Of a DNA stretch of 64,000 nt, positions 30,201-64,000 are shown in pieces. Position 1 is the stretch's first letter. Every line of letters starts with the position of its first letter. Below the pieces are notes generated by a model. The model saw nothing but the letters and a program-made list of their open reading frames with translations, had not been told where the DNA came from and ran no database searches. A program made the position numbers and the translations under genes. The stretch lies in the IMG/VR virus record IMGVR_UViG_3300009537_002640, positions 124,001-188,000 of that record; one strand, written 5' to 3'.

Positions 30201-33200
30201 GCAGTTTGTCCTATAACCCCTAGTCCTGCACCAACACTTAGGTATCCATCTGTACTAACAGTTATATTACCACTAGATTCAGATATTCTTAACCCCTCTA
30301 CCCCGCCAGCAATTAGGGATAGTTGGTCAGCACCAGCACGGCCAAGCCCAGTATCAAGATCTTGTTTATGCGGAGTGATTGTAGGAACGGTGCTTGTGGC
30401 CTCCACATGTCTTATAACAGGACCGCCCGATAATGCAGAAAGTAAACCAAGTCCGGTATTTATTCCGAAAGCCCATGTGCCACCAGATGTAAATCCAATC
30501 GTGTTTGTAGTAACATGATAAATACCAGTATCAGTATCAGAGGCAAAAGTAAATCCTGGTTCTGATACTGACCCCGGCGAGACGGTTATTTGTCCGGCTA
30601 CTTCCAAAAGCGTAGACGGAGATGTAGTTCCGATACCCAATCGATTATTTGTTCTGTCAAAGAATAAATCATTGTCCCCAGCTATTGAGTTGGCACTAGT
30701 AAAGAATGCTACATATCCATCAGCGCCTTCAGACGCTGTAATGCTGCCACTACCATACCCATCAAGAGCCTGTGTGATAACTTGTAGCGTTTCAGATAAG
30801 TCGTTATTTAATATTGCACCGCCGATGCTTAAATCACCGCCAACACTAGCATCATACAGGAGATTGATATCTGTAGTCCCATCCGCAACTGTTAAAAGAA
30901 GCGTGTCTGTACCACCACCATCACCATCAGTTGTCCAGAGTTCTAATTCGCTAGATGAAGAGTTATATATCCACCAATATCTTGTGATAAATCCAGCACC
31001 AACATTTTGTCCAATACCAAGTCTTCTATCATCATACGCAACCGAATTGCTAATAAAGGTTATGGTAGTGGCGTTAGCCTGAAAAGCAAGAGAATTATGG
31101 TGGTAAAATTGCATATTACCACCAGTGTCTTTTATATAGGTGTCTGCTGTTGTATCTAGATTAAGGATAAATCTAGCATTTTCTTGCATTTGTAAATTAC
31201 CATAGGCATCTATAGTTCCACCACCGCTGCCATCACCAGTAATGCGTAGTCCTTCCCAGCCACCAGCTATAAGTGAAAGTTGATCAGTAGCAGCAGCTCC
31301 AATACCGGTATTTGAATCTATCCACATTGGAAGAAGAGTTGGAACAGTACTGCTGGCATTTACTCTTGAAAGAGCTGGTTGGGAACTATTGGAAGAGCCT
31401 AAGTAACTGCCATTTGCAAGCCAGAGAGAAGTTCCAGCAATTGCTATTCTAAGATTATCATCGGATGTTTCATAAAAACCAGTATCTCCATCACCAAATG
31501 CTATTGTTGGCATAGAAGCATTATTTACAGATGGTACTATAAGCCTACTATTTCCATGTACTTGTAAATCACCATAAGCATCTACTGTTGCTCCAGCTAC
31601 ATCTAAGTCGCCAGTTATTCGTAAACCTTCATAGCCACCAACTATAAGAGATAATTGATCTTGAGTAGGAAACCCACCATGACCAATGCCAGTATTGCTA
31701 TCGAACCTTGATGGTAATAAGGTTGGTGTAGTTGGGCCTGCACCAGTATCAGGAAAACCTGCCGCAGTAGATGTAGACGGACCAGATTGCCCGTTTGATT
31801 GAAATACCCAGCGTCTATTTCCTGCCACTGCTACATCTAGTTCATCATCTACTCTTTCATAGAATCCAGTATCGCCATCACCAAAGGCGATGGTAGGCAT
31901 AGTGGCATCATTAATCTGTGAAACTATTAGGCGACCATTGCCTTGTACCTGCAAATCACCATAAGCGTCTATAGTTCCGCCACTATCACCATTTGGTGTC
32001 ACATACAATAGATAATTGTTAGCCGCAGCGAGCGCTAAACTCCCCAACCCAGTATTTACTATGCCTTCAGACTGATTATGTGTTAGTAACAAATATTCAT
32101 TAGGGTTAACACTAGTGTCATTATTGCTATGTATAATAACCGTAGGATCTGCAAAAGCTCCATGTCCATGATCGACAGCTGTATTTGCGTGAGTGGTGAA
32201 TATCATGCTTTTGGCAGTATCACCAAGTGCCCATACCATTGTTGGTTCTGTTTGCTGAGTAGACCAATCTATGAACACATCATCATCAGAACCAAATGTG
32301 AAATTAACATTATCTTGGGTTACTGGTCTAGCATAAAACCTAGAGATAGCATCAAAATGTACCTCACCATCGACTTCAAGTGCCCCACCTATAATAACAC
32401 TGCCACTTGTAAGACTATGACTAGAACTTGCGCTGGTTCCTAATTGAAGTGCAACAGCGCTATCTGTGATTAGATTGCCATTGAAATCCAGGTCGGTTGT
32501 TCCATCTGTCACTGATAGTAGAAGGGTATCTGTACCTCCGCCATCTCCATCAGTTGTCCATAGCTCAAATTGGGTTCCACCAGAATTATATTCGAACCAA
32601 TAAACCGGGGCTGCTGATACAATACCTACCCCTAGTGGCATATCATTTGATGTTTTTAAGCCAGTTGTAAATGTTGCTGAATTACCGCCAGCAGCTTGAA
32701 AAACATTAGCGCCATTATGTACAAATTGAAGGGTGGAGCCAGTAGAATGAATATAAGTATCAGAATCATCATTGGAATTAAGTATGAGTCGCTGATTATC
32801 TCTTAGACTAATATTACCATCGACAATTAGATTATCTTGTATTCCAACACTATTGTGAACAGCTAAATATCCATCAACTATTAAGTCACCATAAATATTG
32901 GTGACAATTGTGCCACTTTCTGTAATACGTATGCCTTCAACTCCACCCGCAATTAGAGATAAAATATCACCTGTAGTGGTATCTGCACCTAAACCGGTAT
33001 CATTATCTAAACTAAAGGCGTAAACAGGGCTAGTCGTTGATGCGGGCTGGTTTCGCATCTGGGGTCCGTTTGAAGTTGTTCCAGAAAATGCATTTCCTAC
33101 TATTTTGAATCGTGCGCCACCACCCGTAGCAAAACCAATCTGATCAGCTGAAAGATTAAATATACCAGTATTGGGATCAGATATAAATGCTATACCTGGT

Positions 33201-35731
33201 AACGATTGAGAGCCATCTGCCACTAATAATTGCCCAGGAACTCCTACTTCACCAGTATCAGTAATAGACAGATATTCATCAGCAGCTTGTCGTATTCGCA
33301 ATGTGCCTTGCGATGTAACGCCAAAGTTCCAATCTCGCAATTCCCCCACATCAGTTTCATCAGGATTGGTTCTGATATGAAGTGAGCCTGGGCCTAGAAA
33401 TATGTCTTTCCATCGTAAGTCTTCGGTGCCTAATCCGTAAGCATCGTCTTGCACAGGATTCACATAACCATCAACGAGATTTTCTACTGTATTAGATATT
33501 AGATATCCATCTACCTCTAGAACCCCAACTATAAGCCTACCCGTTACAAAAGCGTCACCAGAAACAGAAAGTTCATATTCAGGGTTATCGAAACCTATCC
33601 CTATACGACCATTATCTACATATAATGAGCCTTCTGCAACATGTAATCGTGTTGCAGGAGAAGAAGTTCCTAAGCCAAGGCGATTATTCATTCTATCCCA
33701 ATAGAAGTCATTATCACCAGCAAGAGCCCTGGTTCCAGTAAAAAATGCTACATAGCCGTCAGCACTTTCGGTGGCGGTAGTATATCCATCTAGGTCTTTG
33801 GTTATAGTTTGAAGAGATTCGGTTAGGGCGCTGTTTATTAGGTCTCCACCAACACTTAGGTCACCAGCTATATCAACAGAATTATCGAAAAACGATTGCC
33901 CGCTTACAGCTAAAACATAGGGGGAAATAGTAGCACCACCAATACCCACTCGTTGGAAGTTGTCTATTCTAACTGCCTCGCTGCCACTAGTTATTAGAGA
34001 TATTTGGTTGGTAGTGTTAGCACCTATACCAGTTGTGGGATTATTGCGTCTAGGCAATAGGGTGGGATTCGTGCTAGATGCAGCCTCATTTAGTATAGAA
34101 CCACCTGTTGTTGTGGAACTTTGTATATAGCCAGCACCTATTATCCAGCTTTCGGACCCAGCGAATGTTAAGCTTATAAGGTCATCTGATGATTCATGTA
34201 TTCCAGTGTCGCCATCACCAAACACTATCGTTGGCTCATTTACAGCGGTTCCGCCAGGCACCAATATTCTATGACCAATAACCAAATTATTATTGGCTCG
34301 ATCAAAGTATAAATCATTGTCTCCACCTATAGTACCGTCACCAGTGAAGAAAGCCACATAACCATCCGCCCCTGCTGATGAAGTTACATATCCATCTAGA
34401 CCTTTAACTATAGTTTGTAATGCATCAGAGTGTTGTGTGTAGTGCTCAGATTCAGTAGACACCAGTCCTTGTAAATCAGACGATAGGGCATAACCATCCA
34501 GGGCGTCACGGATTTCCTGGCGCTGTTGTGAGCTATCAACCCAACGCTGGTCTTCTACCGTCGATAAAGCATATCCATCTAAATCCTTAGTTATAGATTC
34601 AATTGCACCAGCATGTTGTTGATAATGCTCTTGTTCTGTTTGATAAATACCCTGTAAGCTAAATGCATATCCGTCAGACGCATCGCGCAAATCCTGCAAT
34701 TGTTGACTACTATCAGACCACCTTTGGTCCTCAATAGAAGTCAGTGCATACCCATCAAGGTCACTTAATATAGTTTGAATGGCGACTGAAACTTGAGTAT
34801 GGTGTTCTTGCTCTGTTTGACCATAGCCATCTAGGTCTTTAAGTATAGTTTGTATGGTCTCAGCAATTTGTTGCTTATGTTCTTCTACAGTTTGAGCCAA
34901 TCCAGTGTCCGAAGAGTATCCGTCCAAGTTGGATATAATTGTTTGAATTGCTTCTGAATGCTGAGAATAGTGTTCTTGTTCTGTAGTAACCAATCCTTGC
35001 AGATCAGTATCTAAAGCATAGCCATCTAGAGAGTCTCTAATCTCTTGTAATTGTTGTGATGAATCAATCCATCTTTGATCTTCCACCACAACAGACGCAT
35101 AACCGTCTAGATCTTTACGAATAGTCTGCACTACATCACTGTGTTGTAAATAATGCTCTAATTCTGTTTGCACTTGTCCCTGTAGGTCAGATGCCAGAGC
35201 ATAACCATCTAATGCTGTTCGTATATCTTGTAATTGTTGTGAGGAATCAATCCAACGTTGATTCTCTATGGTGAGAATTGCATAACCATCTAAATCAGAT
35301 AAAATGATTTGCAATGCTTGTGAAAATTGTGTGTAATGTTCGCTTACAGTTTGATCTGACGCATAACCATCCAAAGCTCCGGGAGGGATTTCTGCTGTGC
35401 CATAACCATCTAGGTCTTTAAGTATAGTTTGGATTGCGCTAGATAATTGAGAATAGTGTTCACTTTCAGTTTGGTCAGTAGCGTATCCGTCTAATGCACC
35501 GCCAAAGTCCACATTAGTTTGGGTAATATCCTTAATGGTTCTTATGCCAGTAGAATCTTTGAAGACAATATTTTTGTCTTCATCGACAGTAATGTATACC
35601 TCGTCGCTACCCAGTCCTAACAGTCCTGCTGGGTTGTCCGTACCAATACCAACATAGCCATCAAGCCTATAAATATCACCCTGACTATTTATGGCCCATC
35701 TGGTAATACCTATAGCAGGAATAGTAGCCAT
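24296..35731 (-). CDS. Giant mosaic tail fibre protein (3811 aa)
   Basis: Recurrent fibre modules ('GIGTxxP..LxVxG', 'PTIxFGDGDTGFYE', 'DTGIG..ADQLSLIAGG.EG.RI') and C-terminal 'PRLTTTERDAL...GMVIFNT....QGWDGTTW'. Confidence 0.75.
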   Translation of the reverse strand: MATIPAIGITRWAINSQGDIYRLDGYVGIGTDNPAGLLGLGSDEVYITVDEDKNIVFKDSTGIRTIKDITQTNVDFGGALDGYATDQTESEHYSQLSSAIQTILKDLDGYGTAEIPPGALDGYASDQTVSEHYTQFSQALQIILSDLDGYAILTIENQRWIDSSQQLQDIRTALDGYALASDLQGQVQTELEHYLQHSDVVQTIRKDLDGYASVVVEDQRWIDSSQQLQEIRDSLDGYALDTDLQGLVTTEQEHYSQHSEAIQTIISNLDGYSSDTGLAQTVEEHKQQIAETIQTILKDLDGYGQTEQEHHTQVSVAIQTILSDLDGYALTSIEDQRWSDSSQQLQDLRDASDGYAFSLQGIYQTEQEHYQQHAGAIESITKDLDGYALSTVEDQRWVDSSQQRQEIRDALDGYALSSDLQGLVSTESEHYTQHSDALQTIVKGLDGYVTSSAGADGYVAFFTGDGTIGGDNDLYFDRANNNLVIGHRILVPGGTAVNEPTIVFGDGDTGIHESSDDLISLTFAGSESWIIGAGYIQSSTTTGGSILNEAASSTNPTLLPRRNNPTTGIGANTTNQISLITSGSEAVRIDNFQRVGIGGATISPYVLAVSGQSFFDNSVDIAGDLSVGGDLINSALTESLQTITKDLDGYTTATESADGYVAFFTGTRALAGDNDFYWDRMNNRLGLGTSSPATRLHVAEGSLYVDNGRIGIGFDNPEYELSVSGDAFVTGRLIVGVLEVDGYLISNTVENLVDGYVNPVQDDAYGLGTEDLRWKDIFLGPGSLHIRTNPDETDVGELRDWNFGVTSQGTLRIRQAADEYLSITDTGEVGVPGQLLVADGSQSLPGIAFISDPNTGIFNLSADQIGFATGGGARFKIVGNAFSGTTSNGPQMRNQPASTTSPVYAFSLDNDTGLGADTTTGDILSLIAGGVEGIRITESGTIVTNIYGDLIVDGYLAVHNSVGIQDNLIVDGNISLRDNQRLILNSNDDSDTYIHSTGSTLQFVHNGANVFQAAGGNSATFTTGLKTSNDMPLGVGIVSAAPVYWFEYNSGGTQFELWTTDGDGGGTDTLLLSVTDGTTDLDFNGNLITDSAVALQLGTSASSSHSLTSGSVIIGGALEVDGEVHFDAISRFYARPVTQDNVNFTFGSDDDVFIDWSTQQTEPTMVWALGDTAKSMIFTTHANTAVDHGHGAFADPTVIIHSNNDTSVNPNEYLLLTHNQSEGIVNTGLGSLALAAANNYLLYVTPNGDSGGTIDAYGDLQVQGNGRLIVSQINDATMPTIAFGDGDTGFYERVDDELDVAVAGNRRWVFQSNGQSGPSTSTAAGFPDTGAGPTTPTLLPSRFDSNTGIGHGGFPTQDQLSLIVGGYEGLRITGDLDVAGATVDAYGDLQVHGNSRLIVPSVNNASMPTIAFGDGDTGFYETSDDNLRIAIAGTSLWLANGSYLGSSNSSQPALSRVNASSTVPTLLPMWIDSNTGIGAAATDQLSLIAGGWEGLRITGDGSGGGTIDAYGNLQMQENARFILNLDTTADTYIKDTGGNMQFYHHNSLAFQANATTITFISNSVAYDDRRLGIGQNVGAGFITRYWWIYNSSSSELELWTTDGDGGGTDTLLLTVADGTTDINLLYDASVGGDLSIGGAILNNDLSETLQVITQALDGYGSGSITASEGADGYVAFFTSANSIAGDNDLFFDRTNNRLGIGTTSPSTLLEVAGQITVSPGSVSEPGFTFASDTDTGIYHVTTNTIGFTSGGTWAFGINTGLGLLSALSGGPVIRHVEATSTVPTITPHKQDLDTGLGRAGADQLSLIAGGVEGLRISESSGNITVSTDGYLSVGAGLGVIGQTAISGTLTMGNSLDMGSNSIVNVDLLSFDSASTYNIDLDTTDFVFTFNGTEAWRMSGGSFSAFSVGAQLLNETSSSTNPTIIPRKGSFGNGIGGAAGEVAIIVGGGSKIAAYSAAVVISQDTTFSSAGTASLPAINFGDTDTGFYESSDDVLAVSTLGSIRGSWDAGQYTTYVSIQADLTSGPALLRENAAATNPTLVPNKSDSNTGIGSSGADQLSMIAGGVESIRVEDGYVTVNGDTSLVGDSTITGSVYAQQIVLPTLDEPTNPAITFSNGTGIYASGATLRFATNNQAAWSISNSSSIFSAADSGARIQSGFGSTSVVSYGFNNDGDTGMYRATINQLGFVTGGTEAIRITDTQRVGISTNAPDALLHVAGDGYFDGYLMPRTDDMWGLGTPDLRWRDLYLGTDSIHIISTDAETTTGRDYSWKIEKTPGTTQGFLRLYAGSTPVISISPDARRVGFGEDPTVALANHSITTTGAINTASDYRIGTSSVLLRNSGNYVQYGTADVNEELRFRSGGVVNMTLSTTGEVGIGTGSPEAKLHVAGDGYFDGYLMPHTDNMWGLGTPDLRWRDLYLGPESLHIVSTTAEGRPNRTFTWSVTEDGSLCLSDDGVPVAEFNSSTGASFPAGGGGGGGISATEGADGYIAFFTGSDSIAGDNDLFWDRPNNRLGIGTTAPLNKLDVAGGVVIGSGDAGVDTAPTDGLHVEGRLFAGGGGGVATPGYSFHTATGTGMGIPFGSTSLAFSVSGNLKWTIDSSDRWFSSSGVVASAGGSASTPGYSFATASDFDTGMFRAGADILGFAAGGVEAFRITESGGSTDVNFPTGGTASTPTINFGDGDTGFYAALDNVLSLATGGSKIFDFSSIGMENVNTGGPGILNEISSATNPTLVPRRNDTDTGIGSAAANQLSLVAGGVEGIRITESGSATTVTMGASYGGTPSALYDDLTVQGGSNVGITIGSSTTGFGALLFADADSTWSGNIIFDHSTNQLEIGTAGSTRAYVSSTGLHVNTGSRFFVPQINAPSTPTITFGDGDSGFYESADDTIQISLGGFARFTWSGVNYSSTVSGGPSMRGFDATATTPTFNPDALDSGTGIGTAGTSQLSLIANNIEGIRIDATGSPFINVNGDLNVAGAINNDDLSETFQVILQALDGYGGGGGLTAEEGADGYVAFFTSSGTLAGDNDLYFDRVNNNLQLNHRLIFPNTTGVEGFSSPTIGFGSSGNTGFNAFSDTVIGVSISGSNAWSFTSSEFGSAAGGGNLSASSPSDTNASVRTGSGINSGLGAGGSIYNLSAIVDGQEALRFTRNTEGDNSTVDAYGDVNIQGGGRLFVADGTSVLPSISFLSDTDTGIYRIGSNRLGFSTGSGVKAEVDSEGIVLWPDPGVVKALGTRDINIDAGGSVSLIGNSIEGLRITSGSGQPTIDAYGDLQVQGGSRLIVPSVNNEAIPTIAFGDGDTGFFELTDDAVYFSSVGTSRWWASFDDLAAAQSTRGWHMRNEISTATNPVYCFRFDLDTGVGSGAADAISLIAGGVEGLTITETGGATAVNIPGAGSETTPLLNLGDGDTGWWEASDDVLALSTAGSEVMRIDSLGFIAIGHTTTGIWDWSMRKTTVGSVVANIANLDSGSSSHARLDLATSGGDPYISLSGGDLWYVGLDRSLGGEFVIGDSSIPGGNIRMRIGPTGGDAGIAAAPAATWDVQQANDGAYTDIRVYNTNSTAGSDSVFLAEAQSAGGDPKLELSVSATQDWTVGIDNDDSEAFKIGSNATVGTNTHLTIDTSGNIGIGQAPVTGSKLSLPSENDAATPTISFGDGDTGFYETQDDTIGIAALGINAFFINASQISGATSGSGTVMNEAASATNPTLVPAWSDYDTGIGSAGANELSLITAGAEQVNIASDGYTTFSSGISVGGDSGIDGNLDVGNELTVGSVFLPPRLTTTERDALEPIEGMVIFNTSTKKHQGWDGTTWNDFY
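34360..35510 (-). repeat. Tandem coding repeats (about 25-35 aa) each ending in LDGY
   Basis: Alternating 'TExEHYxQHSxAIQTIxKDLDGY' and 'EDQRWxDSSQQLQExRxALDGY' units; about 14 units. Confidence 0.9.
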
Positions 35732-56977: not shown

Positions 56978-57331
56978 TTAGTATTCTGCTGTCACAGCGA
57001 AGCCATTTTTAACCAGGTATTCATTTAGTGTTTCTGAGCTATCTGCTAAATATATGTAGGCGATATAGCGTCCGTATTTGCCAGTTTTATCTTTCTCAGT
57101 TTGCACGACAACATCCTTGTTCAATATCAATCGCTTAACTTCTTCTGTAGCAGCTATGCCCTTTTTGTACTCTTCAGAATCCTTTTTAACGCCATGAGTT
57201 TCAGGAGTATTTATTCCAGCAAGCCTAACCCTTTCTTTCACATAGACTTTTAGCCCCAAATCTAAATCTAGGTCTACAGTGTCTCCGTCGACTACATTAT
57301 AGCAATGCGCTTTATAAGTATAGAAATCCAT
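56978..57331 (-). CDS. Thermonuclease (staphylococcal nuclease-like)
   Basis: 'VVDGDT', 'RVRLAGINTPE', 'GKYGRYIAYIY', 'LNEYLVKNGFA' SNase motifs; no signal peptide. Confidence 0.9.
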   Translation of the reverse strand: MDFYTYKAHCYNVVDGDTVDLDLDLGLKVYVKERVRLAGINTPETHGVKKDSEEYKKGIAATEEVKRLILNKDVVVQTEKDKTGKYGRYIAYIYLADSSETLNEYLVKNGFAVTAEY

Positions 57332-57348
57332 AGTAATCCTCCTATTAC

Positions 57349-57354
57349 ATTATA
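57349..57354 (-). promoter_or_regulatory. Possible sigma70-type -10 box (TATAAT) for the nuclease island
   Basis: TATAAT-gtaata-GGAGG-attact-ATG; no good -35 element. Confidence 0.3.
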
Positions 57355-57370
57355 CCCCGTCCACGATCAT

Positions 57371-57399
57371 AAAAAAAGGAGCCACGAGGACTCCTTTTT
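57371..57399 (-). terminator. Rho-independent terminator after the major capsid gene
   Basis: Minus strand AAAAAGGAG-TCCTCGTGG-CTCCTTTTTTT; stem flanked by A and T tracts, so potentially bidirectional. Confidence 0.85.
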
Positions 57400-57429
57400 C
57401 GTTTTATGGGTTGTTACCGTCAGCTAGAA

Positions 57430-58455
57430 TTAGCCTGCTGCTACATCCTTACGGCCAACTGCTACACCACGTGGGTTGACAATACCGATTCCGATATTTT
57501 CGTTCACGACCCAACCTAGCTTGAGCTGCTTGGGCTCATCAGCTGGGAGAACTTCAATATCTTGACGGATTGGCATTACACCAACGAACTCAGGGTCAGC
57601 AACACCGAAGATAGTTCCAACAGGAACAATCTTAGAAACGATGATGTCTGCGCCCCAAAGGTGTGCAAAAAGACCAGTCTGTAGGATTTCACGCTGAGTG
57701 ACCATATCTACCTCTCCACCAGTGCCAGCTGCCTGACCACCGCCAGAGCCCCAGTTTAGAATATCGTTGAACTCAACGATGTTCATTAGGAACTTGGTAG
57801 TTACTAGGTCCCAACGGTCTACCTGAACTTTAATCTCAGAGAGATCGCGCTTTAGAAGACCTGCATCCGCGATATCCTGTGCAGTATTCTCGCCACCGAG
57901 AGAATCATCACCTGCGAAATCCAGAGCTGCGAAGATGTTGGCATCCTCTTGTGCCTGAATTTCCTGACGTGCTTTCTGCTGGGCACGGTCGATGACGTTA
58001 AATCTACGACGCTTCACCTCAGAAATACGTACAGTTGGGTTTGAAACAATCTCAAACTCAGGGACTGTTACACGGTCTGCGAAGACACGAGACTCGGGTG
58101 CGGAGCCGTTGCTAGAAATAACAACTGCGCTCACATCGATATCACGGTCATACACAGGCAGTGCACCTTGTGGTAGGGGGTCTACGACTAGAACTCGACG
58201 ACCGACGCCTTGGTAATCCAAGTTACGACGAATTGGGTTCGCCATAGCCTGACCAAGAGCAACCTTTCCTTCCTGAGTCATAAGAGCACGACGAACTAGC
58301 TCGTCCTTCTGCTCCTCTGTGAAAGAAGGCTGACCAGCAAGATTCTGGTTAGCCGATTGGTTCTGCTGGATGATAGACGCAAACTTTACAATCTGCGCTA
58401 ACGCATCACGACTATCAACTGCGTTCAACTCCCCATGTGTATTAAACATACTCAT
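57430..58455 (-). CDS. Major capsid protein (HK97-fold, encapsulin-like)
   Basis: 'LGQAMANPIRRNLDYQGVGRRVLVVDPLPQGALPVYDRD', 'PEFEIVSNPTVRISEVKRRRFNVIDRAQQKARQEIQAQED', 'GWVVNENIGIGIVNPRGV'. Start reassigned to ATG 58455 (GGAGGT RBS); followed by a terminator. Confidence 0.85.
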   Translation of the reverse strand: MSMFNTHGELNAVDSRDALAQIVKFASIIQQNQSANQNLAGQPSFTEEQKDELVRRALMTQEGKVALGQAMANPIRRNLDYQGVGRRVLVVDPLPQGALPVYDRDIDVSAVVISSNGSAPESRVFADRVTVPEFEIVSNPTVRISEVKRRRFNVIDRAQQKARQEIQAQEDANIFAALDFAGDDSLGGENTAQDIADAGLLKRDLSEIKVQVDRWDLVTTKFLMNIVEFNDILNWGSGGGQAAGTGGEVDMVTQREILQTGLFAHLWGADIIVSKIVPVGTIFGVADPEFVGVMPIRQDIEVLPADEPKQLKLGWVVNENIGIGIVNPRGVAVGRKDVAAG

Positions 58456-58659
58456 GAAAGTACCTCCAAAAATTAACCTACGGCTCTTCTGGTCGTATAT
58501 TGGTCCGTCCCATAAGAGTCCATAGAGTATCAATTAGTTTTGATTTTCTTCGTCGGTATAACCGACAGGTGCACAACGAAGTCAAATCAGGTCTTACAGA
58601 GAATCGAAATGTGGGGCCGGGCAATACCAGCCCCACAATCGTATTTAGCTTAAGCTATG

Positions 58660-59373
58660 TTATGCGTTGTGAGTTGCACCGAGATACTGGAACTTAACTC
58701 GGTCAAATGTCTCAGCAGCACCAACTAGCTTGCCAGGGGTGGTTACTAGAGATCCACTACCTGAGGTTTCTACAAACATACCGATTTTGTCAGCTGCCGC
58801 GACTGCCGCAGTAGACACGCTGAGCTTACCTGAAGTAGGCTCACGGTATAGTAGGTCACCTGGTAGAGGAGTATCATTTAGGCCACCGGGTCCACCTGGG
58901 CTACCAGATGTATTTGGGTCTAGTGATGCATGTAGAGCATCGCTAGAAACCGCGTACAATCCTGGCTTGTCCCACGCTGTCACCTTACCAGAACCTGCTG
59001 CAGTGTGAGGTCCTAGCAAAGAACCGCCACTGGAAGTTGTGGTAGCAAGACCAACCGGCGTACCGATTAGCTCACCAAACAAGGTGCCATAGTGTGCCTG
59101 ACCGTCGTCTAGCAAGTAGAAAAGCTTACGAGTCTCAGTTGCAGTATCGGCGATACGAAGCACTGGACGACTTGCAGTAGGGGTACCTACGTCAACTTCG
59201 TCTGCAACGTAACCGTCGAGAACATCTGATGCTGCCTTTTCGCTTGCACTGTTGGTGCGAGATGCCTCGTCTAGAGTACCAACCTCACCGCCAAGGACGT
59301 TTGCTAGATCTGTGTCTAGGCAGTCAAACTGACCCAAAGGCTGAAGACCTGGCTGTAATAGATATAATGCCAT
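58660..59373 (-). CDS. Capsid accessory/decoration protein
   Basis: Directly upstream of the MCP; Gly-rich beta protein with 'AAGSGKVTAWDKPGLYAV'; start reassigned to ATG 59373 (GGAGG RBS). Confidence 0.6.
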   Translation of the reverse strand: MALYLLQPGLQPLGQFDCLDTDLANVLGGEVGTLDEASRTNSASEKAASDVLDGYVADEVDVGTPTASRPVLRIADTATETRKLFYLLDDGQAHYGTLFGELIGTPVGLATTTSSGGSLLGPHTAAGSGKVTAWDKPGLYAVSSDALHASLDPNTSGSPGGPGGLNDTPLPGDLLYREPTSGKLSVSTAAVAAADKIGMFVETSGSGSLVTTPGKLVGAAETFDRVKFQYLGATHNA

Positions 59374-59464
59374 TTTGTTATCCTCCAAATTAGTTTTTGG
59401 GTGGTAAATTCTCACTGACGAAGCAAATTCGATATAGAGAACAACCTTCTTATACTTACATCTA

Positions 59465-59475
59465 AATATTAGTAG
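59465..59475 (-). promoter_or_regulatory. Putative late promoter motif CTACTAATATT
   Basis: TA(C/T)TAATA copy about 90 nt upstream of the decoration-MCP unit. Confidence 0.6.
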
Positions 59476-59489
59476 ATTTCTTTCGCGAC

Positions 59490-61010
59490 TTAGTAGTTAT
59501 TTACTATGTTAAATGCTTCAATTAGGGTATTTCGGTCGGTTATTCGGCCATCTGGGGCTACTAAGGCACCAGTCCATTCGTCGGTTTTTGACCTTTTATT
59601 GAAGTCTTGCTCTAATCTTTTCAGGGTCTGTATCGTATTTCGGTCTACTCGTCCAGTTTGCTGTATACCCAAAAGACCTTGTATCTCAGAAACCTCATTC
59701 TTACCAGGCTCTTTAATGGTCATGCCAGGAGTCTTGGATATATCGGCTGAAACACCCAGTCGTTCTGCTAATCCTACCAAAGTATTAGTTGATTCTTGAA
59801 CAAAAGTAGTTATCTTCTGACCTAATTGTTTGGCTAATTCTGGATTATCGCTACCCTCTACAACCGTCTGCCAATCTCCAAGAGCGCCGTTGATGTCATT
59901 TATTTCTTTAGACATCTTAGTTACATACATCTGGATTGCCCTTTCTGCATTTTCGCCTTTCAGAGCACTATCTACACCTGCAGAAAGTCTTGCCATATCG
60001 GATAAGGAGCCTTTAGCTTCATTAACCACTACCCTTCCTCTACCAGATACTTCTAACCTGGATAATTCAGAGGAAAGCCCATTGCTTGCTTTGCTATTTT
60101 CTGCTGGAGGGTTATCGTCAAACCAACTATATATCTTTAACAACGCTGCCCCACCTGCCAATGCTGCAGCGGACAACCCTAATCTCCTTGCAGTATCACC
60201 CACAGTTAGACCCATAATTTTCTGTCGAGTGGTTAGCTTTCCACCGCCTGCAATTAGGTCTGCTATTTTGTCTTTTGACATTAGCTTACTTAGTCGAGCG
60301 TTATTCTGAGGATTAGCCAGCCACAATTCCAATTGACGAGATGCCGCAGGATTCCTCTTAAGAGCTATATATTTTCTCACGAATGCCGTGTCAGAACCAG
60401 ATGTGGTTTGCTTCATAATATTCTGTGTCAGATTGAAAGCCTCTTCGTATTTTCCTCGTGCTTGTGCAACACCAGGATGAGTCATTGGGGCATCTGAGGA
60501 GCGTAATACATCAAGAGCACCTCTTACATTACCACTATTAGCATTTTGCCATGCACCAGATAGAGTTTCCATCAACTTTTGATTCTCAGTCACTCTACCC
60601 TGCAAGTCCATCAGCATCTGTTCTGCTTGTTCATGTGCAACTTGGTCTAATTGTTGTGGGTCTACTTTTTTCGTAGGATAAACAGTTCTAGTAAGCCTTT
60701 GAATTTCTCGCTGGTCTTCTAGAATTTCAGCCCTAAGTCTTTGCAAAGCTTTAGATAAGTCGCCGTGTCCAGAGCGAACAAGCTTTGTAACCTCTGCTCC
60801 AGCTTTTTCTCCGAGGTCACTAACCTGTTTAAAATCAGTCACAAGCTTTTCAGCCATTCGGGCAGCACCCTCTGCACTTTCTTCAACTGCTTCTTTTCCA
60901 GCGCGAGCCCACCATTTAGCAGATGCACGAGCAAGATCATCGCTGGCACTACCAAATGCTTTAGCAACAGCTTTAGCTACTGGGCTTACCAACTTTCTAA
61001 GTAGGCCCAC
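59490..61010 (-). CDS. Putative internal head/ejection protein with a C-terminal peptidoglycan-binding-like domain; probably made as a -1 frameshift fusion with the upstream ORF
   Basis: Helical protein with hydrophobic 'LGLSAAALAGGAALL' and 'VSEIQGLLGIQQTGRVDRNTIQTL'; the GTG start has no SD, and the frame stays open upstream through a slippery site. Confidence 0.55.
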   Translation of the reverse strand: MGLLRKLVSPVAKAVAKAFGSASDDLARASAKWWARAGKEAVEESAEGAARMAEKLVTDFKQVSDLGEKAGAEVTKLVRSGHGDLSKALQRLRAEILEDQREIQRLTRTVYPTKKVDPQQLDQVAHEQAEQMLMDLQGRVTENQKLMETLSGAWQNANSGNVRGALDVLRSSDAPMTHPGVAQARGKYEEAFNLTQNIMKQTTSGSDTAFVRKYIALKRNPAASRQLELWLANPQNNARLSKLMSKDKIADLIAGGGKLTTRQKIMGLTVGDTARRLGLSAAALAGGAALLKIYSWFDDNPPAENSKASNGLSSELSRLEVSGRGRVVVNEAKGSLSDMARLSAGVDSALKGENAERAIQMYVTKMSKEINDINGALGDWQTVVEGSDNPELAKQLGQKITTFVQESTNTLVGLAERLGVSADISKTPGMTIKEPGKNEVSEIQGLLGIQQTGRVDRNTIQTLKRLEQDFNKRSKTDEWTGALVAPDGRITDRNTLIEAFNIVNNY

Positions 61011-61051
61011 AGGTATAGCTGTTTTATGTAGTGGACTTACCCGACTGCTGA

Positions 61052-61582
61052 TTACCCTTCGTCTGTCGGTGCCTCGTCGAAAGGGGGGCCAGCCTCCTCT
61101 GCAAGTAGAGCTTCTAGTTCAGCATCTATGTTGTCTGCAGAATCATTCATGGCACTCAGTGTATCAGACATCTGGGTCACAACTCTTTTCGCTGCATCAG
61201 TTAGAGAGTTAGCTACATCAGTTGCACCAACTTCTTCTGCAGCTTCAGCCATTTTTACTAGACGAACAACAGTATGAGCATATCTACCCACCAAGGAGCC
61301 GGTTGGGCTTTTATTCAACATTTCTATGAGCTTCTTCTGCTGCTCTACTTGATTTTCTACCAAGCCACCATCACCGCGAGCTTCTGCAACATAGACTGGC
61401 TCTGGATGAGCCTCCTCTATTATGCTCTTCTCTGGCTGGTCTAGTCTCTTCTTTCGGATAGTTTCTACATCCTCTTGGTAAGGATTAGGCTCTGGTAATG
61501 CGGTCTTCTTAAGACCTAAGACATTAGTTTCAGAAGCAATCTTTAGAAACTCTATCATAACCTCGGAATTTTCCCAATTCAT
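61052..61582 (-). CDS. Putative internal head/scaffold-like protein
   Basis: 176 aa; N-terminal 'WENSEVMIEFLKIA' leader; motifs LKKTA and LVKMA. Confidence 0.55.
   Translation of the reverse strand: MNWENSEVMIEFLKIASETNVLGLKKTALPEPNPYQEDVETIRKKRLDQPEKSIIEEAHPEPVYVAEARGDGGLVENQVEQQKKLIEMLNKSPTGSLVGRYAHTVVRLVKMAEAAEEVGATDVANSLTDAAKRVVTQMSDTLSAMNDSADNIDAELEALLAEEAGPPFDEAPTDEG
61079..61085 (-). other. Putative -1 ribosomal frameshift heptamer C CCT TTC
   Basis: X XXY YYZ in the frame of 61052..61582; the -1 frame is that of 59490..61010; internal GGAGG at 61097-61093. Confidence 0.6.
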
Positions 61583-61584
61583 AT

Positions 61585-62193
61585 TTAGCTCCTTGGCCCC
61601 ATATATCCTTGGGGACCATAATTTTTCGGGTCTAGCGATGGGTCTTTTGGAAGAAACTGAAAAGCACCAGCCATCTCTTCACCCTTCTCTCTGGCACCCT
61701 CTTCATTTCCACTAGTAAACATATCGTAAATTTCGCCTATCTTGGTAAAGCCAAAAGCAAACAGTAGATACTTAGCTGCACGCCAAAGATTCTTTAGTAG
61801 TGCTCGTGGACTTATAACATATTTCCATATGAACTTAAGCACCACACTTGCGAACGCTTCCTTTACTATCTGGTTTTCCATAGAACTAGCGATTTTGTTT
61901 ATTCGTTCATCGTTTAGGTTGGCTGTTGCTGGCATTCCAAAAAGCTGTGTAGTAACACCTTGTTCATCGAGCCATCTACCAAAGTCCTCTAACCCATATC
62001 CGTAATTAGATAAAACTTTATCAAGGGCAGTTATCATCATTCCGCTCCAACCGAAAACAGATGGGGCGTATGATATCAATCTAAAAAGATTTTGCCCGGG
62101 GCCTTGATCGGTTCTCCACATACCTTGAACCATTTTCTTTATGCCTTCTGCAACAAATGCTCGTTTTGAAATATATCGCATAGCTTTGTCCAT
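61585..62193 (-). CDS. Putative internal head protein with hydrophobic helices
   Basis: Start reassigned to ATG 62193 (TAATG coupling); motifs ISKRA and IVKEA, each followed by an amphipathic/hydrophobic segment. Confidence 0.55.
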   Translation of the reverse strand: MDKAMRYISKRAFVAEGIKKMVQGMWRTDQGPGQNLFRLISYAPSVFGWSGMMITALDKVLSNYGYGLEDFGRWLDEQGVTTQLFGMPATANLNDERINKIASSMENQIVKEAFASVVLKFIWKYVISPRALLKNLWRAAKYLLFAFGFTKIGEIYDMFTSGNEEGAREKGEEMAGAFQFLPKDPSLDPKNYGPQGYMGPRS

Positions 62194-63830
62194 TATAGAA
62201 TCGAATTGCGTCCCTGAAAACGGCCATAGTTCCTCTTTACATAATCTTGTAGCATAGGCATGCTCCAATCAGATGGAGGGGGCAGTCCTCTTGGTCCCTT
62301 AAATACCTGTGACACCAGTCGCACTTGATTCTCTCTACTAAAACCCCTATTAGCTAGCCAAGTTTGTGCCGGTGTTCCATCAATAAACTTGTTATTGAGT
62401 GCAGCTAAAATTTCTGCACCTGTAGGGTTCCACTTATGAGGCTGCTCTTCAACATCATAGGTTCCGCCACCATACTGAACTCCAGTCTGTCGCTCTTGTG
62501 GAGCTGCACCAGGCTGAGTACTTTGTTGCACTGTCTGTGACAGAGTATTAACCTTTTGGCTTATAGCATTCAATACAGCAGGATTTTTACCAACTACCCT
62601 ATAGTCTGTTTGTGGCACATTCATCCACTGACGCAAACGAGGAGACGAATTCATAAATGTCTCCAGCGCCTTTTGAGTATTTGGTCCATAAATGCCGTCT
62701 TCATTGATTCTGCTTGCGCCAGTACTATATGCCTGGTTAAGATAGTTCAAAGACTGTTGCATGCTTGTTACGGCTGGATTCCTTCTGGACAATTGTCGCT
62801 GAGTCCTCTCTTTCTTAGCCGCTCCAGCTGGCCCCCTAAGAGTAACTTGAGTTCCGTCGCCAAGTGTTAGAGCGCGTTTAGACAACCGCTCCTTAGAGCT
62901 TGCTGTAGTAGCAGCAGTGCCTAAGGCTTTTTCAAACAAGCCATGAAGCATAACTAAACTCTGAACGTTGTTCTTAACATCTTCAAGAGTTGCACTCTTT
63001 GATGCCAACGCTTCTGCCAAGTTGTATCCTGCTTCTTCGCTCTTATTATCGAATTTAGGAGGTCCGCCAAAGCGCTCAGAAAGCTGGTCATACATAGATT
63101 TTACTTTCTGCCCAAGCTCAGCAAGGTCCTTATTTAAAGTCTGCCCATATTCCTCGACAGCTTTCTGCATAACGGCCTTTTGTTCAGATGCTGCTTTTTC
63201 TTTTAGCTGTAACATAGCAGTTAGTGTCTTATCAATTGCCTGTTCAGCCTGCTCAGCATCACCAGATATCAAACCACCATAACCCCAATCGGTAAGTTTT
63301 GGCTTCAATTGCGTAGGAAACCACTCCTTAAGGCTAACAAGATACTTTGTAAGTTCTGTTAGAGCATTAAGCTTACCTTTGGTTTGTTGAAGTTTCTCTT
63401 CCTCAGACTCAGGAACATCCTGAACGCCCATAGCCGCCTTAAACTCTTTTAGTTTGCCGGTGACTTTTTCTATCTGAGCTTTGGTTTGTTCGTCCTTAGG
63501 ATCTAAGTCCTCAAACCTTTCCACTAAATCATCCAAATTATCATCAGCCAGCTTAGTAGCCTGCCAAACAATAGTAGCTCCAAGAATAAGAGCCATTGCC
63601 GCCCAGCCTGCTGGTCCTGCAGGAGCAAACATTCCAGCTACTGCAGCGGCTTTACCGGTGACACCAAGAGCTAATGCGGCTTTAGCAGCACCAATAACTG
63701 CTGCCTCCGTAGCTACATTGCTTAATATAGCTTCGCCCCAGTCAGAACTAGCGGCTTCTTTCACTATAGCAGGGGCCATAGCAATACGCGCATATTCCTG
63801 CATGATTTCGCTATTTTCAAACTGAGACAT
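62193..63830 (-). CDS. Putative internal head/ejection protein with a Gly/Ala-rich hydrophobic hairpin and a peptidoglycan-binding domain
   Basis: Start ATG 63830 (GGAG RBS); 'VTSMQQSLNYL...EDGIYGPNTQKALETF' is a PG_binding_1-type motif; IVKEA and LSKRA motifs. Confidence 0.65.
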   Translation of the reverse strand: MSQFENSEIMQEYARIAMAPAIVKEAASSDWGEAILSNVATEAAVIGAAKAALALGVTGKAAAVAGMFAPAGPAGWAAMALILGATIVWQATKLADDNLDDLVERFEDLDPKDEQTKAQIEKVTGKLKEFKAAMGVQDVPESEEEKLQQTKGKLNALTELTKYLVSLKEWFPTQLKPKLTDWGYGGLISGDAEQAEQAIDKTLTAMLQLKEKAASEQKAVMQKAVEEYGQTLNKDLAELGQKVKSMYDQLSERFGGPPKFDNKSEEAGYNLAEALASKSATLEDVKNNVQSLVMLHGLFEKALGTAATTASSKERLSKRALTLGDGTQVTLRGPAGAAKKERTQRQLSRRNPAVTSMQQSLNYLNQAYSTGASRINEDGIYGPNTQKALETFMNSSPRLRQWMNVPQTDYRVVGKNPAVLNAISQKVNTLSQTVQQSTQPGAAPQERQTGVQYGGGTYDVEEQPHKWNPTGAEILAALNNKFIDGTPAQTWLANRGFSRENQVRLVSQVFKGPRGLPPPSDWSMPMLQDYVKRNYGRFQGRNSIL

Positions 63831-63841
63831 ATAGCTCTCCA

Positions 63842-64000
63842 TTAGATATTGATGAATTGCTTTATTTGATCAGGGGTTAGGCTTTTAACTGTTCCTGCAA
63901 ACTCCTGCTCTAATTTGCCCATTGCAGCTTCTGGGGTAAAGAAACGAATCATAGATTTATAAGATTCTCTAGCCCTAGTACGCAAAGCTTGTTCTAATTC
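63842..64000 (-). CDS. 3' end of an upstream gene (partial)
   Basis: Open frame ELEQALRTRARESYKSMIRFFTPE...KQFINI* ending at TAA 63844-63842. Confidence 0.6.
   Translation of the reverse strand, partial: ELEQALRTRARESYKSMIRFFTPEAAMGKLEQEFAGTVKSLTPDQIKQFINI

What the first reader, a model, noticed from the sequence alone, without database searches (positions are those of the whole stretch)
61535..63830. Shared N-terminal leader (W/F)ENSE(V/I)MxE(F/Y)x(K/R)IA: candidate capsid-targeting sequence
Seen: MNWENSEVMIEFLKIA (start 61582) and MSQFENSEIMQEYARIA (start 63830) begin two otherwise dissimilar proteins, each followed within about 10 aa by a KxA motif (LKKTA, IVKEA). Known: T4 internal proteins use a short cleavable N-terminal capsid-targeting sequence. 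Inference: an equivalent packaging signal, potentially usable to load cargo.
Basis: partly seen in the sequence, partly recalled or inferred. Interest (0 to 1): 0.6.

Follow-up and report, generated by a model that had tools for sequence, protein, structure and literature searches.

The report
Shared cleavable leader on phage head-core proteins
Three otherwise different proteins in the head-assembly gene block of a 206-kb jumbo phage begin with the same conserved ~16-residue helix followed by a conserved Lys-x-Ala site, which most likely is a removable N-terminal propeptide that brings them into the assembling capsid, like the T4 capsid-targeting sequence but unrelated to it in sequence and not yet shown by experiment.

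Summary
Both genes lie on the minus strand, two and four genes upstream of the major capsid gene of a 206,495-bp jumbo phage.

- **Not chance:** a profile built only from P0001-family N-termini finds three places in the whole genome. All are N-termini: P0001, P0002, and a third 540-aa protein (P_A) just past the window edge.
- **Conservation:** the leader is kept in about 100 metagenomic P0001 homologues and in most P_A and P0002 orthologues. It was lost or shortened in three P0002 orthologues.
- **Paralogy:** P0002 shares only the leader. P0001 and P_A also share an internal "AHP…LVE(N/T)" module, which recurs near the C-terminus of the giant prohead protease.
- **Likely cleavage site:** the motif [ILVMF]-x-K-x-A is five-fold enriched in the head-core block. 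It is invariant at several poorly conserved positions and falls in predicted disordered linkers.

My best reading is a cleavable N-terminal assembly or targeting propeptide (confidence about 0.55). It is a functional analogue of the T4 capsid-targeting sequence (CTS), not a sequence relative. Cleavage, packaging and the binding partner are untested. The single complex prediction gave no verdict.

The parts
61052..61582 (-). P0001, 176 aa. It has the leader, a K-x-A site, a disordered conserved 'AHPEPVYVAEARGDGGLVEN' core and a C-terminal helical hairpin. Probably a scaffold-type head-core protein.
   Evidence: 108 homologues, aligned as A1. AF2 model: helix 7-19, low-confidence 30-77, hairpin 97-163 with pLDDT above 90. 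AAGGAG lies 6 nt upstream of the ATG.
61535..61582 (-). Leader of P0001, residues 1-16 (M-N-W-E-N-S-E-V-M-I-E-F-L-K-I-A).
   Evidence: Family consensus W-E-K-S-E-V-M-x-E-F-L-K-I-A. E, F, I and A are 92-97% conserved in 96 members.
61499..61513 (-). LKKTA, P0001 residues 24-28: putative prohead-protease site.
   Evidence: K-x-A is present 6 or 9 residues after '..IA' in 80 of the 85 family members that carry it, out of 96. A28 is at least 90% conserved.
62193..63830 (-). P0002, 545 aa. Order of elements: leader, K-x-A, Gly/Ala-rich hydrophobic stretch, helical bundle, linker with a second K-x-A (LSKRA), C-terminal helical domains with a weak peptidoglycan-binding signal. Candidate internal or ejection protein.
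   Evidence: Homologues P0113-P0116. 13-member alignment A3. AF2 model. PG_binding_1 E=9.7e-4, below the Pfam cut-off, and phrog_1512 E=6e-5.
63780..63830 (-). Leader of P0002, residues 1-17 (M-S-Q-F-E-N-S-E-I-M-Q-E-Y-A-R-I-A).
   Evidence: Scored E=2.5e-5 by the HMM built from the P0001 family only. Kept in P0113-P0116, L002, L009, L010, L011 and L013. Reduced or lost in L003, L004 and L008.
63753..63767 (-). IVKEA, P0002 residues 22-26: putative protease site.
   Evidence: K24 is one of 15 invariant columns in an alignment with 29% mean identity. The site lies in a segment with pLDDT below 50.
62871..62885 (-). LSKRA, P0002 residues 316-320: putative internal protease site.
   Evidence: S317, K318 and R319 are at least 90% conserved and A320 is invariant. 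The site lies in the disordered linker, pLDDT below 50 for 308-317.
61585..62193 (-). P0004, 202 aa from the ATG that overlaps the P0002 stop (TAATG). It has no leader but carries conserved K-x-A sites: ISKRA at residues 8-12 (window 62158-62172) and INKIA/IVKEA at 98-113 (window 61855-61902).
   Evidence: Alignment A2: S9, K10, R11, A12, K111 and A113 are invariant at 24-34% identity. Site list.
63842..64000 (-). C-terminal 52 codons of P_A, the third leader protein. The gene is G000 187842-189464 and its leader lies outside the window. It starts M-R-H-N-Y-N-F-D-D-S-E-V-M-R-E-F-A-N-I-A, followed by LVKQA and LLKEA.
   Evidence: HMM E=1.3e-7. Orthologues in 11 loci. It shares the AHP core with P0001.
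57430..58455 (-). Major capsid protein, 341 aa from the ATG. Its N-terminal ~44 residues are absent from the phage G capsid protein and contain IVKFA at residues 22-26 (window 58378-58392).
   Evidence: phrog_2522 E=1.2e-78. 53.5% identity to phage G gp27, beginning at residue 45. The Q-[IL]-V-K-[FY]-A-S motif is conserved in relatives.
59490..61010 (-). P0003, 506 aa: a neighbour in the head-core block without the leader. Listed for context only.
   Evidence: No leader hit and no [ILVMF]-x-K-x-A site.

Best explanation
The shared N-terminus is a two-part propeptide.

- Part one is an acidic helix of about 16 residues, [WF]-[ED]-x-S-E-[VI]-M-x-E-[FY]-x-x-I-A.
- Part two follows after a 5-9-residue spacer and is the site [ILV]-x-K-x-A.

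The propeptide sits on at least three proteins of the head-core block of this jumbo phage:
- P0001, a scaffold-type protein.
- P_A, its larger paralogue.
- P0002, an unrelated protein with a hydrophobic Gly/Ala-rich segment and a weak peptidoglycan-binding signal, likely an internal or ejection protein.

Inferred mechanism: the helix docks these proteins onto a common partner in the assembling prohead core, so they are enclosed by the capsid shell. The prohead protease is the N-terminal domain of the 1342-aa protein encoded about 10 kb upstream. It then cuts at the K-x-A site, and at further K-x-A sites in P0002, P0004, the capsid protein and itself. This removes the leader and frees the mature proteins.

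Shown: the motif, its N-terminal position, its conservation and distribution, the enrichment and conservation of K-x-A, and the presence of the protease.

Inferred: cleavage, the exact scissile bond, packaging, and the identity of the partner.
For: Leader:
- It is specific. There are only three hits in 206 kb, all at N-termini and all in adjacent or near-adjacent head genes.
- Five relatives' whole records, including one complete 441.9-kb genome, show hits only in the same head-module proteins.
- It is conserved over long distances. In 96 P0001-family members, E, F, I and A are 92-97% conserved while the flanking linker varies.
- P_A orthologues in 11 loci and most P0002 orthologues keep it.
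- It sits on non-homologous bodies. P0002 shares nothing else with P0001 or P_A, and three P0002 orthologues have shortened or lost it, so the leader behaves as a module.

Context:
- The carriers lie between a prohead protease and the capsid gene. The protease matches phrog_18299 at E=1.3e-15 and is 35% identical to phage G gp19, E=2e-38. The capsid gene was identified.
- Gene order is conserved in relatives.

K-x-A motif:
- [ILVMF]-x-K-x-A occurs 21 times in 5112 aa of the 13 head-core proteins, against 45 times in 54310 aa elsewhere.
- A site lies within the first 40 residues in 6/13 of these proteins against 6/110 others (Fisher p=2.7e-4).
- K-x-A columns are invariant or nearly so in otherwise poorly conserved alignments (A2; A3).
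- The sites fall in low-pLDDT linkers.
- An aligned FVKLA/LVKTA precedes the catalytic domain in this protease and in phage G gp19.

Precedent: T4 internal proteins use a 10-residue cleaved N-terminal targeting sequence (PMC9026906, PMC10229621), and the first 30 residues of P1 DarB direct packaging (PMC9024508).
Against: - There is no virion proteome and no N-terminal mapping, so neither packaging nor cleavage is shown.
- The one complex prediction, P0001 with P0002 residues 1-50, gave no verdict.
- P0001 and P_A also share the 'AHP…LVE(N/T)' module with the protease C-terminus. That module could be the real capsid-docking element, leaving the leader with another role.
- Three P0002 orthologues lack most of the leader, so it is not indispensable for that family.
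- The leader set is small and closed, unlike the varied cargo carried by T4-like phages.
- Eisenberg hydrophobic moments are only moderate, 0.25-0.33.
Confidence: 0.55

Rival explanations
1. Processing-only propeptide. The leader is an exosite or recognition element for the prohead protease, or a mask that keeps the hydrophobic N-terminal part of P0002 and the scaffold paralogues inactive until they are inside the prohead. Incorporation is achieved by other parts, for example the AHP core or the C-terminal hairpin.
For: - The distance from the leader to K-x-A is nearly constant, with spacers of 6 or 9 residues in 80 of 85 P0001-family members that carry the site and total propeptide lengths of 26-29 residues.
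- P0001 and P_A have an additional shared module that also sits at the protease C-terminus.
- The mature N-terminus of P0002 would begin directly before a conserved W-x-W-x-D and a Gly/Ala-rich hydrophobic stretch.
Against: - Other conserved K-x-A sites (P0004 ISKRA, P0002 LSKRA, capsid IVKFA) have no leader, so the leader is not needed for site recognition as such.
- P0002 has no other module in common with the core proteins that could explain its incorporation.
Confidence: 0.2
2. Permanent co-assembly helix. The leader is an oligomerisation or partner-binding helix that stays on the mature proteins, and the K-x-A motif has a structural or binding role rather than being a cleavage site.
For: - K-x-A also occurs inside predicted helices: FLKIA within the leader, and LVKMA in the hairpin of P0001, where L108, K110 and A112 are at least 90% conserved.
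- No cleavage data exist.
Against: - The K-x-A sites after the leader and in P0002 residues 316-320 lie in disordered linkers.
- Enrichment is confined to the protease-to-capsid block and to N-termini.
- The capsid protein has a ~44-residue N-terminal extension, absent from phage G, that contains such a site.
Confidence: 0.1
3. Relic of common ancestry or local gene conversion between neighbouring genes, with no function of its own.
For: - P0001 and P_A are domain-level paralogues.
- P0002 is directly adjacent to P_A, and its leader in this subclade (EYARIA) is identical to that stretch in some P_A orthologues.
Against: - The leader is among the best conserved parts of a family that has diverged to 43-60% identity.
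- It is kept in three families across relatives whose capsid-block proteins are only 24-40% identical.
- Serine codon families differ between the two copies, which argues against recent DNA-level conversion.
Confidence: 0.05
4. A nucleotide-level signal, such as a translation-initiation or regulatory element at the 5' ends of the two genes, rather than a peptide signal.
For: Both copies are at gene starts.
Against: - The DNA of the two leaders differs at synonymous positions and in codon family, while the peptide is kept.
- In P_A the motif starts at residue 7, not at the start codon.
Confidence: 0.02

Closest known systems
T4 capsid targeting sequence (CTS) of internal proteins IPI, IPII and IPIII
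   Same: - A short N-terminal peptide shared by otherwise dissimilar head-internal proteins.
- It is followed by, or contains, a prohead-protease site.
- The genome encodes a prohead protease and core proteins.
- By eye both have an acidic-aromatic-hydrophobic core (T4 Q-E-F-I-A-E; here x-E-F-L-K-I-A).
   Different: - No detectable sequence relationship: the leader HMMs give negative bit scores on T4 IPI-III read from NC_000866.
- The leader is longer here, about 16 residues plus a spacer.
- The putative site is [ILV]-x-K-x-A, separate from the helix. In T4 the L/I-x-E site lies within the CTS (PMC9026906).
- The scaffold-type protein itself carries the leader.
- The carriers are clustered next to the capsid gene instead of scattered.
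- Function is untested here.
Phage P1 DarB N-terminal packaging signal
   Same: An N-terminal stretch of up to 30 residues directs a large internal or ejected protein into the head (PMC9024508).
   Different: In P1 no consensus is shared among the Dar proteins (PMC9024508). Here the signal is a clear, shared, conserved motif. No experimental test exists here.
N-terminal propeptides of phiKZ/SPN3US-type jumbo-phage head proteins, removed by the prohead protease
   Same: Many head and ejection proteins of a jumbo phage carry N-terminal propeptides that end at a simple protease motif (PMC10052503, PMC7411985).
   Different: - From my own knowledge, not checked here: those propeptides end at A/S/G-x-E motifs and are not reported to share a common leader sequence.
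- This phage is a phage-G-type relative by capsid protein, not phiKZ-like.
Encapsulin cargo-loading peptides
   Same: A short terminal peptide shared by unrelated cargo proteins, which docks onto the inside of an HK97-fold shell. This is a functional analogy from my own knowledge.
   Different: - Encapsulin peptides are usually C-terminal, unrelated in sequence and not cleaved.
- Binding of this leader to the capsid protein was not tested.
Helical phage scaffolding proteins (P22 and phi29 type)
   Same: P0001 is small, acidic and mostly helical, with a confident C-terminal helical hairpin. It is encoded just upstream of the capsid gene.
   Different: - No sequence or structural match to any solved scaffold.
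- It carries an N-terminal leader and an unusually conserved disordered core motif.

Membership tests
T4-type capsid targeting sequence | Located at the extreme N-terminus of proteins encoded with, or acting in, the head core | tested here: met
   All three hits start at residues 3-7 of proteins encoded between the prohead protease and the capsid gene.
T4-type capsid targeting sequence | Shared by proteins whose mature parts are unrelated | tested here: met
   P0002 shares only the leader with P0001 and P_A. P0001 and P_A, however, are domain-level paralogues.
T4-type capsid targeting sequence | Sequence similarity to the T4 IP leaders (M-K-T-Y-Q-E-F-I-A-E) | tested here: not met
   Leader HMMs score T4 IPI, IPII and IPIII at -0.2 to -1.1 bits.
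T4-type capsid targeting sequence | Removed by the prohead protease at a defined site | tested here: inconclusive
   - A conserved, enriched [ILVMF]-x-K-x-A motif follows the leader and lies in disordered linkers.
- A protease is encoded nearby.
- There are no cleavage data.
T4-type capsid targeting sequence | Necessary and sufficient to bring a protein, including a foreign one, into the capsid | not testable with these tools
   This needs virion proteomics and reporter fusions.
Phage scaffolding protein (for P0001) | Small helical protein encoded next to the capsid gene, present in proheads and absent from or degraded in virions | tested here: inconclusive
   The helical hairpin and gene position fit. 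There is no match to solved scaffolds. Presence in particles is not testable here.
Encapsulin cargo-loading peptide | Terminal peptide that binds the inner face of the HK97-fold shell protein | not tested
Sec/Tat-type signal peptide | Basic N-region followed by a hydrophobic core of 10 or more residues | tested here: not met
   The leader has a net charge of -2 to -3, no hydrophobic run, and mean hydrophobicity close to 0.

The most novel reading that the evidence does not exclude
The leader and the 'AHP…LVE(N/T)' module are the two halves of a head-to-tail docking system.

- The protease carries the core module only.
- P_A and P0001 carry both leader and core.
- P0002 carries the leader only.

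Together they would polymerise into a self-organising prohead core, which the protease dissolves by cutting every K-x-A linker. The ~28-residue leader would then be a portable tag for loading foreign proteins into the very large capsids of a widespread, uncultivated jumbo-phage clade.
Probability: 0.15. Interest if true: 0.7.

Novelty: new member of a known kind. Interest (0 to 1): 0.5.

Why it matters
If confirmed, this would be a second clear case after T4 of a consensus N-terminal capsid-targeting propeptide. It would occur in a phage-G-related clade of jumbo phages known almost only from metagenomes.

It would provide:
- A predicted protease specificity (Lys-x-Ala) that allows mature head proteins to be annotated across that clade.
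- A short list of likely internal or ejected proteins.
- A candidate tag for loading proteins into very large capsids.

It also shows how scaffold paralogues, a giant protease and an ejection-type protein may be tied together by two short shared modules.

Tried and rejected
Searches that found nothing:
- Nucleotide search of window 57000-64000 against phage records: no match.
- tblastn of P0001 and P0002 against phage records: no match.
- Pfam and PHROGs give nothing for P0001, P0003, P0004 or P_A, and only sub-threshold PG_binding_1 and endolysin-family hits for P0002.
- Foldseek of the P0001 and P0002 models against the PDB: nothing significant.
- Profile searches of A1 and A4 against PDB sequences: nothing.
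- Pfam and PDB sequence searches of the protease domain: nothing. Its assignment rests on PHROGs and on phage G gp19.
- The look-up of sequencing runs: none was listed.

No verdict:
- Complex prediction of P0001 (A1) with P0002 residues 1-50 (A3) scored ipSAE 0.00. This is no support and no evidence against binding.

Considered and rejected or downgraded:
- Leader and core HMM scans within ±16 kb of the capsid gene in phage G, Tunturi_5, Rctr197k and LR745208 found no leader or core. The leader is therefore restricted to a subclade.
- The K/D-rich 115-aa protein and the orthologues of the 462-aa protein have leader-like N-termini by eye. They score only E=4-6 with the HMM, so I do not count them as carriers.
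- The eye-level resemblance to the T4 CTS was tested and rejected as homology.

Not used:
- The large representative-protein search: a 27-position profile cannot reach significance against that library, and no claim here rests on absence of relatives.
- No genetic code other than table 11.
Full report
**What is at the site**

The window is part of a single 206,495-bp virus record with 42% G+C. Of 179 crude ORFs, 173 lie on the minus strand.

The two proteins in the finding are minus-strand genes:
- P0001 is window 61052-61582, 176 aa.
- P0002 is window 62193-63830, 545 aa.

They lie two and four genes upstream of the major capsid gene at window 57430-58455. That gene matches phrog_2522 at E=1.2e-78 and is 53.5% identical to Bacillus phage G gp27.

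About 10 kb further upstream is a 1342-aa protein. Its N-terminal domain is a head maturation protease: phrog_18299 at E=1.3e-15, and 35% identity to phage G gp19 at E=2e-38. Both leader genes therefore belong to the head-core block between protease and capsid protein.

Yes. The strict pattern occurs only at these two N-termini in the six-frame translation of the genome. BLASTP of the two proteins aligns only the leader, 8 of 14 residues identical.

I built a 29-position HMM from 84 N-termini of P0001 homologues only and scanned all six frames of the genome. It returned P0001 (by construction), then a 540-aa protein (E=1.3e-7), then P0002 (E=2.5e-5). The next hit had E=0.5.

The 540-aa protein, which I call P_A, is the gene immediately upstream of P0002. 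Only its last 52 codons are inside the window (63842-64000). Its leader starts at residue 7 and is followed by LVKQA.

The conserved serine is encoded by TCC in one gene and AGC in the other. This points to selection on the peptide rather than on the DNA.

**Conservation elsewhere**

P0001 has 108 homologues in metagenomes, some on contigs of 289-481 kb. Nearly all start with M-S-W-E-K-S-E-V-M-x-E-F-L-K-I-A. In 96 members with a complete leader, E, F, I and A are 92-97% conserved. A K-x-A follows 6 or 9 residues after "IA" in 80 of the 85 members that have it, out of 96.

Gene order from protease to capsid is the same in the relatives I fetched. P_A orthologues in 11 loci range from 278 to 928 aa. 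They begin M-[RK]-H-I-[GS]-F-[DS]-E-S-[ST]-V-[LM]-x-E-[FY]-A-[RK]-I-A, followed by K-x-A.

P0002 orthologues were aligned as 13 sequences with 29% mean identity:
- Most carry a recognisable, more diverged leader.
- Three (L003, L004, L008) have it shortened or absent.

Searching a three-family leader profile (A4) in five relatives' whole records gave convincing hits only in these same head-block proteins. One of those records is a complete 441.9-kb genome.

More distant capsid relatives have no leader within 16 kb of the capsid gene. These are phage G, Tunturi_5, Rctr197k and LR745208. The leader is thus a feature of one uncultivated subclade.

**Are the carriers paralogues?**

Partly. P0001 and P_A share more than the leader:
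- P0001 residues 54-135 align with P_A residues 165-241 (E=4e-4).
- A profile of the P0001 core finds P_A orthologues at E=1e-5 to 1e-8.
- The same profile finds the C-terminal helix-turn-helix of a small K/D-rich protein in the block.

The heart of this similarity is the motif A-H-P…L-V-E-[NT]…E-Q. It recurs near the C-terminus of the giant protease. In relatives the match has E=1e-7 to 1e-9. In this genome it covers residues 1132-1234 at E=0.03, 42% identity over 105 residues.

P0002 has none of this. The picture is still of a small related set, not of many unrelated cargo proteins.

**Structure**

- *P0001 (AlphaFold2 with 40 homologues, mean pLDDT 75).* The leader is a helix at residues 7-19. 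Residues 30-77 have low confidence and include the almost invariant AHP…GDGGLVEN motif. A confident helical hairpin spans 97-163 with pLDDT above 90. This fits a scaffold-type protein with a linear binding motif.
- *P0002 (13 homologues, mean pLDDT 66).* Residues 1-84 have low confidence, although the leader is still predicted helical. A helical bundle spans 90-304, followed by a disordered linker at 305-350 and helical C-terminal domains.
- Neither model matches a solved structure.
- P0002 has a Gly/Ala-rich hydrophobic stretch after the leader, read directly from the sequence. Its peptidoglycan-binding signals are below threshold. I read it as a candidate internal or ejection protein, and that remains an inference.

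**The K-x-A motif**

The pattern [ILVMF]-x-K-x-A occurs 21 times in the 5112 residues of the 13 proteins from protease to capsid. It occurs 45 times in 54310 residues of the other large ORFs, a five-fold difference. A site lies in the first 40 residues of 6 of 13 block proteins against 6 of 110 others (Fisher p=2.7e-4).

The motif is invariant where little else is:
- K24 and S-K-R-A at 317-320 in the P0002 family.
- I-S-K-R-A at 8-12 and K-x-A at 111-113 in the P0004 family, which is only 24-34% identical.
- Q-[IL]-V-K-[FY]-A-S in the N-terminal extension of the capsid protein, an extension that phage G lacks.
- F-V-K-L-A just before the catalytic domain of the protease, aligned with L-V-K-T-A of phage G gp19.

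Phage G gp20 and Tunturi_5 gp328 also start with short peptides ending in K-[KR]-T-A. In the models the sites after the leader and at P0002 residues 316-320 lie in disordered segments.

I infer that this is the recognition motif of the prohead protease of this lineage, probably with alanine at P1. Herpesvirus assemblin, a structural relative of phage prohead proteases, also cuts after alanine. That statement rests on my own knowledge and was not checked. The scissile bond is not known.

**How it most likely works**

The leader helix is far more conserved than a cleavage site needs. Several conserved K-x-A sites have no leader. P0002 has nothing else in common with the core proteins.

The most economical reading is a common partner in the prohead core that the helix binds, followed by removal of the leader at K-x-A. 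This is the logic of the T4 capsid targeting sequence (PMC9026906, PMC10229621) and of the P1 DarB signal (PMC9024508).

It is not a sequence relative of the T4 signal. I read T4 IPI-III from NC_000866 and the leader profiles score them below zero.

I put about 0.55 on "cleaved leader that mediates incorporation or co-assembly". Cleavage is more likely (about 0.75) than the targeting role.

The main rival (0.2) is that the leader only serves processing or masking, and that the AHP core or the hairpin does the docking. Minor rivals are an uncleaved assembly helix (0.1), a functionless relic (0.05) and a nucleotide-level signal (0.02).

**What I could not settle**

- The partner is unknown. My one complex prediction, P0001 with P0002 residues 1-50, gave no verdict and counts neither way.
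- No sequencing runs were listed for the region.
- No virion proteome is available.
- No published description of this motif turned up in the papers I read. That was not an exhaustive search.

**Verdict**

- The carrier set is small and partly paralogous.
- Nothing has been tested at the bench.
- This is a new member of a known kind of system, of moderate interest.

Noticed in passing
Window 63842-64000 (C-terminal end) and G000 187842-189464 (L001:1843-3465, minus strand): A third leader-bearing protein, P_A (540 aa), lies immediately upstream of P0002.
   Followed up: yes
P0001 residues 58-80 (window about 61343-61411); P_A residues 168-200; protease residues 1132-1234 (within L001:7257-11285): A second shared module, 'AHP…LVE(N/T)…EQ', links P0001, P_A and the C-terminal part of the 1342-aa protease. 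AlphaFold2 predicts it as disordered although it is nearly invariant. It may be the actual capsid-docking or leader-binding element.
   Followed up: partly
Head-core block, window 57430-64000 and L001:1843-11285: [ILVMF]-x-K-x-A is five-fold enriched and locally invariant in these proteins. Five sites lie in the protease itself (residues 34, 636, 646, 706, 1186). This is a candidate protease specificity for the phage-G-related lineage.
   Followed up: partly
Window 57430-58533: The capsid ORF is listed from a TTG at 58533, but orthologues start at the ATG at 58455 (341 aa). This clade's capsid protein has a ~44-residue N-terminal extension that the phage G capsid protein (282 aa) lacks.
   Followed up: partly
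L001:16094-19966 (minus strand; G000 202093-205965): A 1290-aa protein combines a eukaryotic-type topoisomerase IB catalytic core (E=7.5e-31), a weak VanY-like hit and a 2',5' RNA ligase/LigT-type phosphoesterase domain (E=3.5e-10). This is an unusual fusion.
   Followed up: no
L001:14046-14756 (minus strand): A 236-aa trypsin-like serine peptidase (Trypsin_2 E=4.8e-15) with a lipoprotein-like N-terminus is encoded upstream of the head block. It is a second protease that could in principle take part in processing.
   Followed up: no
Window 24296-35731, 12892-19434, 3611-8719 (minus strand): There are very large ORFs of 3811, 2180 and 1702 aa. Their only Pfam hits are a beta-helix region and a weak endosialidase tail-spike match, so they are probably fibre or spike proteins.
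   Followed up: no
L002:3582-4367 and 14334-14924; L004:13193-13945 and 15286-16818: LAGLIDADG and HNH homing-endonuclease genes are inserted inside the head-gene blocks of relatives, including directly next to the capsid gene.
   Followed up: no
L009:1539 onward and L010:9991 onward (652-aa and 754-aa open frames): In two relatives the P0001 homologue, with leader and core, forms the N-terminus of a much longer open frame. The scaffold-type module can therefore be fused to other domains.
   Followed up: no
L001:5245-5592 (minus strand) and its orthologues in L002-L004, L011 and L013: A small K/D/E-rich protein has a leader-like start (M-S-R-x-G-D-E-M-[MI]-L), a [KV]-T-A-A site and a C-terminal helix-turn-helix like that of P0001. 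The leader resemblance is too weak to count (E=4-6).
   Followed up: partly
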